Shown here: piece after piece, positions 46,301 to 49,300 of the stretch | Position numbering within the stretch: the stretch's first letter is position 1 | Layout of the letters: each line of letters opens with the position of its first letter | Source of the DNA: Heteronotia binoei | Lineage: Eukaryota | Direction: 5' to 3' | Assembly: GCF_032191835.1 (NCBI RefSeq) | Contig: NC_083224.1 | Coordinates: 1,240,001 to 1,304,000 of the forward strand | DNA: 64,000 nucleotides | Notes under the pieces: generated by a model | The model's input: the letters and a program-made list of their open reading frames with translations, nothing else | Databases searched by the model: none | What the model was told of the DNA's origin: nothing | Program-made: the position numbers and the translations under genes

Positions 46301-49300
46301 CTGTGGGAAGAAGCAGCAGCACTCCTCAGGGCATCACGGCCTCAAATCAACCCTCGCAGGGACCAGTCTTCTGGCCCAAGGTCACCGGGCAAGCTAGCAC
46401 CGTGAACGGGAATTTGAATCCAGAGCCCAGATCCGCACTCTAACCTGCACCCCACGCTGCTGGCTCTCCATCTGCCTCTCCCGGCACATGGGAGAGCAAC
46501 AAGCAGCCAGGCGACTGGGACAAGCCCTTGCCAGAGTGGGGGGAAGGGCGCCAACAGAGCCCGAGTCTCCGGGCTTTAACGAACAATTGCGGGCGGGGAG
46601 TGGGGGCGACTTTTGAGGTCGCACAGGAAGCATCTCAGACAAGCATCCCAGTCTTTTTGGGCCGGGGCGAAGAAACTTGTCCTGAGGTGGAAGCTGCTGC
46701 CAAAACGCTTGCAAAAACCTGGGCAGCCACTCAGAAACTTTGCAGGCCCTACCTGTTTTCTGAAGGCACTTGATGGAGCCAAGGAAAGTGCTGGGGGGCA
46801 CCTCGTTCTAAGAAGGAGCGACAGCCCCCCTTCCCCTTCTTATGCAGGGAGGGGAGTTGAGTTTCCTGCATAGTGCAAGGTGTTGGACTAGATGACCCTG
46901 GAGATACCTTCCAACTCTAGGAGTCTATTATTCTAAGTTCCCTCAGGCTTCCTCAGGAGGTGGGGGGCTCTCCTTCCTTGGAGGTTTGAACAGAGGCTAG
47001 ATGGCCATCTGACAGCAATGAGGATCCTGTGAATTTAGGGGGAGGTGTTTGTGAGTTTCCTGCATTGTGCAGGGGGTTGGACTAGATGACCCTAGAAGTC
47101 CCTTCAACTCTTCTATGAATCTAACAGGTTTCCTCGGGAGGTGGTGGGCTATCCTTCCTTGGAGGTTTTTAAAACAGAGCTAGATGGTCATCTGATAGCA
47201 ATGAAGATCCTGTGAATTTAGAGGGAGGTGTGAGTTTCCTCCATTGTGCAGGGGGTTGAACTAGATGACCCTGGAGGTCCCTTCCAACTCCAGGATTCTA
47301 CAAACATCTGTCAGAGGGATATTCTTAGGATGTGGCTCTCATCTGCCCTAGAGCCTGACCCCCTCCCCGTGTCTAAGCCCCCCTGCTGCTGCAGCCCAGC
47401 TCCTGCCTCAGCTCCAGGCCCAAAGACTCACCAGCCTGGTTCTTCCACAACTCCGCTGCATCCGTGTTCAAGGGACTCTCGATGTTGGGCTCTGGGGGTG
47501 GTAAACAGAAGCCGTTTCAGGGCAGGCAACTTGCTCATCAGCCCTCCCCACCCAAAAACCCCACCTCAGAATTGGGGCACAAGATCCAGGCCAGAGCTTA
47601 ACAGCACACTTGGAACGCCCTTGTGGGGGGGGGGGGGGGGACAGTGGGAGAATATGCAGTCAGAAATACTTGCGCCCCACACCTTGGCTTCAGGCCTCTC
47701 AGCAAAGAAGGGGAAGAGGGCTCAGAGAGACAGTGGGGCACTGTGTGACACAAAGCAGCGAGAACTTTTTGGCCACTGTGCGACACAGAGTGTTGGACTG
47801 GAGGGGCCATTCGCCTGATCCAACAGGGCTTCTCTTATGTTCTTCTGTGACACAGAGTGTTGGACTGGAGGGGCCACTGGCCCGATCCAACAGGGCTTCT
47901 CTTATGTTCTTCTGTGACACGGAGTGTTGGACTGGATGGGCCACTGGCCTGATCCAACATGGCTTCTCTTATGTTCTTCTGTGACACAGAGTGTTGGACT
48001 GAATAGGCCATTGGCCTGATCCAACATGGCTTCTTTTATGTTCTTAACCTCCTTTCCCCTCCCCCTCCCCACAACAGACACCCTGTGAGGTGGGTGGGGC
48101 TGAGAGAGCTCGCACTGCAGCTGCCCTTTCAAGGACAACTCTGTCAGAGCTCTGGCTGACCCAAGGCCATTCCAGCAGCTGCAAGTGGAGGAGTGGGGAT
48201 TCAAACCCAGTTCTCCCAGATAAGAGTCTGCACACTTAACCACTACACCAAACTGGCTCTCCAAAGGAAATAAGGGTGTGTTGTGTACACTAAATTACCA
48301 CCAATTTTTCACTGGGAGGAGAGGAGGGGTCTGCCCATGGCCAAGGAGCTTCCTACTCACCCCCCAGCAGGCTCTGGATGGAGAGGAGGATGGTCCGGAC
48401 GTCGAAGAGAGCTGACCACTGGTCCTTGAGGATGTCCAGGCAGATGTTGCCCTGCAGGTCCACGTTGGGGGTGGTAGCAGGGGGTGAGGAATTTTACGGT
48501 GGCGCATTGTATGGGTACCCACTGGGGAACTCCAAAGACAGCCTGTAGCCGCAGGTCTTCGTACACCTGGGGGCAAATGCAAGCACCCATCAGACACAGA
48601 AGAAGCCTCTATCTCTCCTCTCCCAACTATTGTTAGCAAAACCCCATCCCTGTAAGTCAGGGGTGCGGAACCTTTTTTCTGCCAAGGGCCATACGGATAT
48701 TTACAACATCATTCGTGAGCCATAAAAAATTATCAACTTCAAAAGCAGTGCTCCACTGAGGGAGAATGATTCAGGCCAGCAAAATGAATGCAAATAATTG
48801 TTTTTCTATTTGAAGTCATGTGGGGAGAGCTAATCTGGCACACACACCGTCCGCTGCCCTAGACAAATGCATAGGTCCAGAACGTTTTTCTAGAAAAAGC
48901 CCAGCAGGAACTCAGTAGCATATCAGACCACATCCCCTAATATTAGCATATTAGTAAACACACTAATTAGCATATTAGGCCACACCCTCTGGATAATCGA
49001 GTGCAAAGTGAACTGTGACAGTTACTTCGCCAGGCCCTGCAGCGATTGTGGCCGGCCAGCCAGGCCCCCGGGAGGCTGCTGCACAGCGCCGTTGGGCCCC
49101 CACGATCCTCGCTGGCCAGCCGGCCCCAGGGAGGCTGCCGCACAGTACATCTGGGCCCTGTGATTTATTTATTTATTTATTCTATGACTTATATCCCGCC
49201 CTTCCCATAAAATGGCTTATATCCCCGCCCTTCCCATAAAATGATCCCTGCCTGGCCCTGGGGAGGCTGCTGCACGGCGCGTCTGGGCCCCACGATCCAC

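What the first reader, a model, noticed from the sequence alone, without database searches (positions are those of the whole stretch)
48361..48566. UBE2C exon 4 has three 1-nt indels; the catalytic Cys is out of frame as assembled
Seen, against the conserved E2 reading: +1 at CTG CGG C TAC (48549-48550), -1 at GCG CC- ACC (48501-48502), and +1 in the C-run of CAC CCCC AAC (48467-48471). The exon is 206 nt instead of 205. As read it gives [35 protein letters not shown]..., losing HPN and the GNICLD active-site Cys. The underlying codons, splice sites and other exons are intact, with no stops. Established: UBE2C is the APC/C priming E2. Inference: most likely uncorrected long-read indels in a poorly polished stretch beside large arrays, since the other five genes show no indels. 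Real recent pseudogenisation would be remarkable.
Basis: partly seen in the sequence, partly recalled or inferred. Interest (0 to 1): 0.7.

Follow-up and report, generated by a model that had tools for sequence, protein, structure and literature searches.

The report
Assembly indel errors in gecko UBE2C
A gecko cell-cycle gene (UBE2C) looks broken by five single-letter slips in two exons, but they look like sequencing or assembly errors in a working, expressed gene, so this is a quality flag and not a gene loss.

Summary
Exon 4 of minus-strand UBE2C (48566-48361) is 206 nt and reads in two alternating frames. There is an extra base at 48548-48550, a missing C at 48501/48502, and an extra C in run 48467-48471. 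Exon 3 (50087-50001) has a further -1/+1 pair, already noted by this scan on this same window.

The lesions are most likely assembly artefacts (about 0.85).
- Four of the five are changes of one base in G/C runs of three or more.
- With the frames followed, 141 of about 143 residues of exons 2-6 match other squamates. The two private changes are conservative.
- A related gecko's DNA contig has one letter more and one fewer across exon 4. Seven of its eight listed differences fall on third codon positions.
- One near-identical RNA contig (1 mismatch) stops exactly at the exon-4 donor and is one letter shorter than the window over the stretch holding the C-run.
- Five indels with almost no substitutions fit consensus error, not decay.

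Caveats:
- The RNA contig is shallow (depth 3.4), its species label is coded, and the gap position was not printed.
- The assembly's own reads were not available.
- The neighbouring satellites are clean, so the noise is confined to at most about 2.4 kb.

Interest is low.

The parts
48361..48566 (-). UBE2C exon 4 (UBC core with HPN and the catalytic Cys), 206 nt as assembled where 205 is expected
   Evidence: AG acceptor and GT donor are intact. The pieces match gecko UBE2C proteins.
48548..48550 (-). Indel 1: one extra base in CTG CGG C TAC (either the C at 48548 or one of the two Gs)
   Evidence: Frame switch between VYEDLR and YRLSLEF. The relative's DNA contig alignment stops at 48549.
48501..48502 (-). 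Indel 2: CC where the frame needs CCC (GCG CC- ACC)
   Evidence: Frame switch between YPYNA and TVKF. Relative contig X7 record 32 has two gaps of opposite sign over 48387-48549. The last letter of the X1 RNA contig is clipped at 48503.
48467..48471 (-). Indel 3: a run of five C where the frame needs four (CAC CCC AAC)
   Evidence: Frame switch between CYHP and [11 protein letters not shown]. X1 RNA contig record 5 has 141 letters on 142 window letters over 48361-48502.
50001..50087 (-). UBE2C exon 3, 87 nt, carrying a compensating -1/+1 pair
   Evidence: [10 protein letters not shown] / [11 protein letters not shown] / TINGAAGT lie in three frame pieces.
50057..50058 (-). Indel 4: CC where CCC is needed (TTC C-CT GAG)
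   Evidence: pieces ex3_A and ex3_B have to share base 50058.
50025..50028 (-). Indel 5: GGGG where GGG is needed (ATT GGG G ACC)
   Evidence: The relative's exon-3 contig alignment ends at about 50024 (from_end values).
54499..54593 (-). UBE2C exon 1 coding part (ATG at 54593), intact
54343..54370 (-). UBE2C exon 2 (R)LQQELMTLM, intact, AG/GT
47432..47491 (-). UBE2C exon 5, intact, 20 of 20 residues identical to Eublepharis and Gekko
   Evidence: The relative's DNA contig over 47380-47511 has no gaps.
46242..46300 (-). UBE2C exon 6 coding part with TGA stop, intact, 20 of 20 identical to Sphaerodactylus
   Evidence: An X1 RNA contig covers about 46200-46301, with no depth in the intron beside it.
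50471..54256 (.). 79-bp satellite in intron 2, used as an internal control for indel noise
   Evidence: only one of 45 units has private indels. The other length variants recur at higher-order spacing.

Best explanation
This is the true, syntenic UBE2C gene of a gecko. It has six exons on the minus strand and encodes the E2 that primes substrates of the anaphase-promoting complex. The five single-base indels in exons 3 and 4 are consensus errors of the assembly, mostly miscounted G/C homopolymers, confined to a short stretch between two repeat arrays. In the animal the gene is intact, transcribed and spliced, and encodes a protein of about 177 residues with HPN and the catalytic cysteine in frame. 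Shown here: the indels, the conserved codons beneath them, the intact splice sites and other exons, the synteny, the spliced near-identical RNA contig that is one letter shorter than the window, and the relative's frame-preserving DNA. Inferred: that the missing letter of the RNA contig lies in the C-run, that the RNA comes from the same species, and that the errors arose in sequencing or polishing.
For: 1) All five lesions are changes of one base, and four sit in G/C runs of three or more. This is the commonest residual error of long-read assemblies (PMC8812927; PMC12007338).
2) With the frames followed, only 2 of about 143 residues of exons 2-6 are private to the window, K>R and Y>F, both conservative.
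3) DNA of a related species (X7 record 32) lies on 48387-48549 with 163 letters against 163 and two gaps. That is one letter more and one fewer, as the conserved frame requires. Seven of its eight listed differences are third-position changes, synonymous in the corrected frames.
4) RNA contig X1 record 5 has 1 mismatch in 141 letters. It ends exactly at the exon-4 donor 48361, with 21 further letters that do not lie on the intron, and it is one letter shorter than the window over 48361-48502, where the extra C sits. Another X1 contig covers exon 6 up to its acceptor with no depth in the intron.
5) The other four exons and all GT-AG sites are intact.
6) The neighbouring genes have unbroken frames: a 691-aa ZSWIM1/3 frame and a 261-aa SNX21-like frame.
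7) Earlier unchecked notes of this scan report a cluster of about six single-base indels in the Hoxc9 homeobox, and a young retroelement whose only defects are in homopolymers, in the same genome.
Against: 1) The assembly's own reads were not available. No public run held more than 0.13 of the sampled words, and all were Logan contigs.
2) The RNA contig has depth 3.4, its organism is coded, and the place of its one gap was not printed. It reaches only indel 3 and the edge of indel 2.
3) The noise is oddly local. The 79-bp array starts 384 nt from exon 3 and the 67-bp array lies about 5 kb upstream of it. Together they show 3 private run-length changes in 313 G/C runs, against 4 of 10 runs in exons 3-4.
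4) Repeat copies inside 48046-50470 show at most a small excess of gaps.
5) The read technology and polishing history are unknown.
Confidence: 0.85

Rival explanations
1. The ancestral UBE2C locus is really and recently inactivated in this gecko lineage. APC/C priming would be taken over by UBE2D and UBE2S, or by a second, intact UBE2C copy such as a retrogene elsewhere in the genome. An intronless copy would also yield exon-joined RNA contigs.
For: As assembled, the gene cannot make an active E2. No UBE2C protein of the window's own species appears among the best 120 relatives or in the gecko clusters, as expected if annotators did not call it coding. Human cells lacking UBE2C, and even UBE2C plus UBE2S, are viable (PMC4785794). 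The adjacent arrays are cleanly assembled, so the region is not generally noisy. An RNA contig that stops at an exon end cannot by itself tell a spliced mRNA from a retrocopy transcript.
Against: From general knowledge, neutral decay gives roughly one indel per eight to ten substitutions. Five indels in 293 nt would then come with tens of substitutions and stop codons, yet there are two conservative private residues and no stop in the underlying codons. Differences from a relative are almost all synonymous in the corrected frames. All splice sites and the other exons are intact. The near-identical RNA differs from the locus by one substitution over about 240 nt, too little for a separate diverging copy.
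Confidence: 0.07
2. The indels are real but sit on only one haplotype: a null allele in the sequenced individual, tolerated in a heterozygote or in a hybrid or polyploid lineage. The assembler happened to pick that haplotype, and the RNA comes from the other allele.
For: It would reconcile an intact transcript with a broken assembly. The window differs from both the RNA contig and the relative at 48498 (ACC against ACT), which may be an allelic difference.
Against: The same indel-to-substitution argument applies: five frameshifts on one allele with almost no substitutions is not how alleles diverge. Nothing here shows heterozygosity.
Confidence: 0.05
3. The exons were corrupted during polishing by reads from elsewhere. 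Candidates are short reads from a processed UBE2C pseudogene, or error-prone cDNA reads, mis-mapped onto the parent exons. That would explain why the exons are hit harder than the flanking repeats.
For: Indel density is 1.7 per 100 nt in exons 3-4. It is near background in the flanking arrays and only slightly raised in repeat copies of 48046-50470.
Against: This is still an artefact, so it is a variant of the main explanation and not a biological rival. A SINE copy in intron 2 (50161-50280) also has two private 1-nt indels, which hints that the noise is not limited to exons. No pseudogene copy is known. Unique intron sequence could not be assessed at all.
Confidence: 0.03

Closest known systems
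Vertebrate UBE2C (UbcH10), the APC/C priming E2
   Same: The best solved-structure matches are human UBE2C chains (31 of 35 residues, E 3e-15). It hits Pfam UQ_con. The exon structure and N-terminal extension match gecko, lizard, snake and turtle UBE2C proteins. The neighbours are a ZSWIM1/3 gene, an SNX21-like PX+TPR gene and an EF-hand (troponin C-like) gene, which from general knowledge is the human 20q13 neighbourhood.
   Different: As assembled, exons 3 and 4 carry five frame-breaking single-base indels. There are two private conservative substitutions, K>R in YRLSLEF and Y>F in SALFDV. K>Q in DILKDQW is shared by all geckos examined.
Homopolymer-length consensus errors that falsely pseudogenise genes in long-read assemblies
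   Same: The lesions are changes of one base in short G/C runs, with no accompanying substitutions, are nearly balanced in sign, and create frameshifts in an otherwise conserved gene. The phenomenon is described in PMC8812927 and PMC12007338.
   Different: Those papers deal with bacterial genomes. Here the errors are clustered in at most about 2.4 kb, while adjacent repeat arrays and other genes of the window are clean. The read type is unknown.
RefSeq 'LOW QUALITY PROTEIN' model of UBE2C in Gekko japonicus (XP_015267813.1)
   Same: Another gecko assembly whose UBE2C model carries RefSeq's LOW QUALITY PROTEIN label, which from general knowledge marks a model corrected against its genome sequence. 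Its N-terminus reads through the end of intron 1 (PSLPRRLQQ), a string also present in this window.
   Different: It is a different species and assembly. What was corrected there is not known, and its exon 4 is intact apart from T>N next to the site of indel 2.

Membership tests
UBE2C orthologue (E2 C / UbcH10) | UBC core domain (Pfam PF00179) | tested here: met
   Piece 48466-48362 hits UQ_con at E 2.9e-11, profile positions 74-108.
UBE2C orthologue (E2 C / UbcH10) | HPN motif and catalytic Cys (GNICLD) in one reading frame | tested here: not met
   The codons CAC CCC and AAC ... TGC are all present, but as assembled they are separated by an extra C in run 48467-48471. The condition is met only if that base is an error, as the RNA contig suggests.
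UBE2C orthologue (E2 C / UbcH10) | Closest relatives are UBE2C, not other E2s | tested here: met
   UBE2C chains score 56-57 bits against 40 bits for UBE2N. tblastn with five gecko UBE2C proteins maps all six exons.
UBE2C orthologue (E2 C / UbcH10) | Conserved genomic neighbourhood | tested here: met
   ZSWIM1/3, PX+TPR (SNX21-like) and EF-hand (TNNC2-like) genes lie in the window. The comparison with human gene order rests on general knowledge.
Assembly homopolymer indel error | Lesions are changes of one base inside homopolymers | tested here: met
   Four of five lie in G/C runs of three or more, and the fifth in CGGC.
Assembly homopolymer indel error | Independent reads of the same organism disagree with the assembly at the sites | tested here: inconclusive
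   One RNA contig (depth 3.4, 1 mismatch) is one letter shorter over the stretch with indel 3, and its last letter is clipped at indel 2. The gap position was not printed, the organism is coded, and indels 1, 4 and 5 are not covered.
Assembly homopolymer indel error | No matching excess of substitutions | tested here: met
   Two private residues in about 143, and 1 substitution against the RNA contig in 141 nt.
Assembly homopolymer indel error | Local drop in read depth or consensus quality | not testable with these tools
Unitary pseudogene | Relaxed constraint: non-synonymous changes, stops, decayed splice sites | tested here: not met
   There are no stops in the underlying codons, all GT-AG sites are intact, and differences from a relative fall on third positions.
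Unitary pseudogene | Lesions confirmed in independent DNA of the species | not testable with these tools
   No DNA run of the species with unique-sequence contigs was found.

The most novel reading that the evidence does not exclude
The five indels are real, and this gecko has inactivated its only syntenic UBE2C. It would then run the anaphase-promoting complex on UBE2D and UBE2S or on a relocated copy, making this the first natural vertebrate loss of the APC/C priming E2.
Probability: 0.07. Interest if true: 0.75.

Novelty: not a real feature. Interest (0 to 1): 0.12.

Why it matters
As an artefact, it matters only for data quality. An annotation pipeline faced with five frameshifts will drop UBE2C or call it a pseudogene, giving a false gene loss in comparative studies of geckos. 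Together with the Hoxc9 note from the same genome, it suggests that this assembly has short pockets of homopolymer errors that can hit essential genes. Gene-loss claims from it therefore need read-level confirmation. If the indels were real, a vertebrate living without UBE2C would be a natural test of how far UBE2D and UBE2S can replace it (compare PMC4785794).

Tried and rejected
- My first solved-structure search used a reference one base out of frame and found nothing. It worked once corrected.
- The look-up of sequencing runs found no run holding more than 0.13 of the words, and only Logan contigs.
- The single read-laying run gave the two key contigs but did not print where their gaps lie.
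It returned nine fragments, none a match to this gene (best 88% identity over 77% of the query), so no fragment of the gecko's own transcript turned up.
- Window self-BLAST gap rates were only slightly higher inside 48046-50470, about 0.4 per 100 nt and not significant.
- A private-indel scan of repeat copies was under-powered, with only two usable segments in the stretch.
- Programmed frameshifting was considered and rejected, because five sites of both signs in two exons of a conserved enzyme fit no known recoding signal.
- The joined (spliced) coding sequence was not built or searched. Exons were handled one by one by reference.

Full report
**What is there**

The minus strand of 46.2-54.6 kb carries a six-exon UBE2C gene. 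tblastn with squamate UBE2C proteins and direct reading give this map:
- exon 1 coding part, 54593-54499
- exon 2, 54370-54343
- exon 3, 50087-50001
- exon 4, 48566-48361
- exon 5, 47491-47432
- exon 6 coding part, 46300-46242, ending in TGA

All introns are GT-AG. A 79-bp satellite (50471-54256) fills most of intron 2, and a 67-bp array (55012-59082) lies upstream.

The last in-frame piece of exon 4 matches human UBE2C chains at 31 of 35 residues (E 3e-15). Other E2s score well below that. The piece also hits Pfam UQ_con.

The window also holds an unbroken 691-aa ZSWIM1/3 frame, an SNX21-like PX+TPR frame and an EF-hand (troponin C-like) exon. From general knowledge this is the usual vertebrate neighbourhood of UBE2C. 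This is therefore the ancestral locus and not a stray copy.

I did not verify the species.

**The observation**

It is correct. Exon 4 is 206 nt and its conserved codons lie in two alternating frames:
- VYEDLR (48566-48549)
- one extra base at 48548-48550
- [15 protein letters not shown] followed by CC (48547-48501), where CCC is needed
- [11 protein letters not shown] (48500-48468)
- one extra C in the run 48467-48471
- [35 protein letters not shown] (48466-48362)

As assembled, the frame leaves HP, loses the N of HPN, and puts the catalytic cysteine out of frame.

Exon 3 carries two more indels: CC for CCC at 50057-58 and GGGG for GGG at 50025-28. They cancel, so the exon keeps its normal 87 nt. 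The scan had already noted this pair on the same window, and I confirm it.

The total is five indels in 293 nt. The 2,862 nt of the ZSWIM and SNX21 frames of the same window have none (Fisher p = 7e-6).

**Artefact or real**

Four lines of evidence point to an artefact.

First, the kind of lesion. All five are changes of one base, four of them in G/C runs of three or more, and their signs nearly balance. This is the typical residual error of long-read consensus (PMC8812927), and such errors are known to pseudogenise genes falsely (PMC12007338).

Second, what is missing. With the frames followed, only 2 of about 143 residues of exons 2-6 are private to this window when compared with five geckos and seven other reptiles. 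Both are conservative, K>R and Y>F. From general knowledge, neutral DNA gains roughly eight to ten substitutions per indel. Five real indels should therefore come with tens of substitutions and some stop codons, and there are none.

Third, a relative. A DNA contig of another species (run X7, 12 mismatches in 163 nt) lies on 48387-48549 with equal length but two gaps. That is one letter more and one fewer than the window, as the conserved frame demands. Its alignment stops at 48549, where the first indel sits. Seven of its eight listed differences are third-position changes, synonymous in the corrected frames. Selection has therefore acted on the corrected frame.

Fourth, RNA. In run X1, a 163-letter contig lies on 48361-48502 with one mismatch (48498, ACC to ACT, synonymous, shared with the relative). 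It stops exactly at the exon-4 donor, with 21 more letters that do not match the intron. It has 141 letters where the window has 142. The extra C of the window lies in this stretch. The contig's last letter is clipped at 48503, where a third C would stand.

A second X1 contig covers exon 6 up to about its acceptor, with no depth in the intron beside it. So a near-identical, spliced transcript exists, and it is one letter shorter than the assembly where the frame requires it.

**Limits of this evidence**

- The tool did not print where the contig's gap lies. The C-run is an inference, but any other place would mean a second, unrelated frameshift.
- The contig is shallow (depth 3.4) and its organism is coded.
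- Indels 1, 4 and 5 are not covered by any near-identical contig.

**How local is the problem**

The arrays themselves are clean. In the 79-bp array, only one of 45 units has private indels. The other length variants recur at higher-order spacing and are surely real. The 67-bp array has two units with CCC for CCCC.

Per G/C run of three or more, that is 3 changes in 313 runs. In exons 3-4 it is 4 changes in 10 runs (p = 2e-5).

Repeat copies inside 48046-50470 show only a small, non-significant excess of gaps. One SINE copy in intron 2 (50161-50280) has two private 1-nt indels, against a background of 0.09 per 100 nt. This hints that the noise is not restricted to exons, but it rests on one segment.

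The bad stretch is therefore at most about 2.4 kb, and its cause is not established. A low-depth pocket, a patch or mis-polishing are all possible.

Unchecked notes of this scan report about six single-base indels in the Hoxc9 homeobox, and a young retroelement whose only defects are in homopolymers, in the same genome. If they hold, such pockets recur in this assembly.

**Rivals**

A real, recent loss of UBE2C cannot be excluded without reads. It would be tolerable in principle, since human cells lacking UBE2C and UBE2S survive using UBE2D (PMC4785794). It does not fit the lack of substitutions, the intact splice sites or the transcript.

A null allele on one haplotype meets the same objection.

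Corruption of the exons by mis-mapped retrocopy or cDNA reads would still be an artefact.

No UBE2C protein of this species appears among the best relatives or in the gecko clusters. That fits the locus not being annotated as coding, which either reading predicts.

**Verdict**

This is an intact, expressed UBE2C that looks broken because of a small cluster of homopolymer errors (confidence about 0.85). Interest is low, apart from serving as a warning about false gene losses in this assembly.

The joined coding sequence was neither built nor searched. Exons were treated one by one by reference.

Noticed in passing
window 50001-50087: Exon 3 of the same gene has its own -1/+1 pair of homopolymer indels (CC for CCC at 50057-58, GGGG for GGG at 50025-28). 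They cancel in length and scramble 11 residues ([11 protein letters not shown]).
   Followed up: yes
window 50161-50280: A SINE copy in intron 2, about 80-190 nt from exon 3, has two private single-base indels (near 50211 and 50236) relative to seven paralogous copies in the window. The RNA-run contigs of the family show the same (read laying rows at 50212 and 50231). It may be further local error or ordinary decay of an old copy.
   Followed up: partly
window 47174-47179: Nearly all repeat-family contigs of four runs lack one letter at 47174 and have one extra after 47178/47179. This is a window-specific shift pair inside the 179-bp repeat downstream of exon 5. It may be an alignment effect, a real variant or another error pair.
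   Followed up: no
window 50471-54256: The 79-bp satellite shows higher-order structure in its length variants. The 78-nt units start at 51430, 52535, 52850 and 53086. The 77-nt units start at 53401, 53636 and 53950.
   Followed up: partly
protein P0159 (Gekko japonicus XP_015267813.1): RefSeq flags UBE2C of another gecko as LOW QUALITY PROTEIN. Its N-terminus reads through the end of intron 1 (PSLPRRLQQ, a string also present at window 54387-54361). It has N for T at the residue next to the site of indel 2.
   Followed up: partly
window 54630-54725; proteins P0005, P0153, P0160: Public UBE2C models of Pogona vitticeps and Gekko kuhli begin with residues that match the translated region upstream of this window's ATG (about 65% identity). 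Those N-termini are therefore probably mis-modelled 5' sequence, and the upstream region is conserved across lizards.
   Followed up: no
window 48443-48445 (run X7, related species): The relative's contig has CTT for ATC at the codon before the catalytic cysteine (GNICLD to GNLCLD), an unusual change for UBE2C if the contig is orthologous.
   Followed up: no
window 48498: The window has ACC where both the near-identical RNA contig and the relative have ACT (synonymous). This may be a polymorphism, or a substitution error beside indel 2.
   Followed up: no
window 23357-23456: There is a run of 100 N, an assembly gap, about 23 kb from the gene.
   Followed up: no
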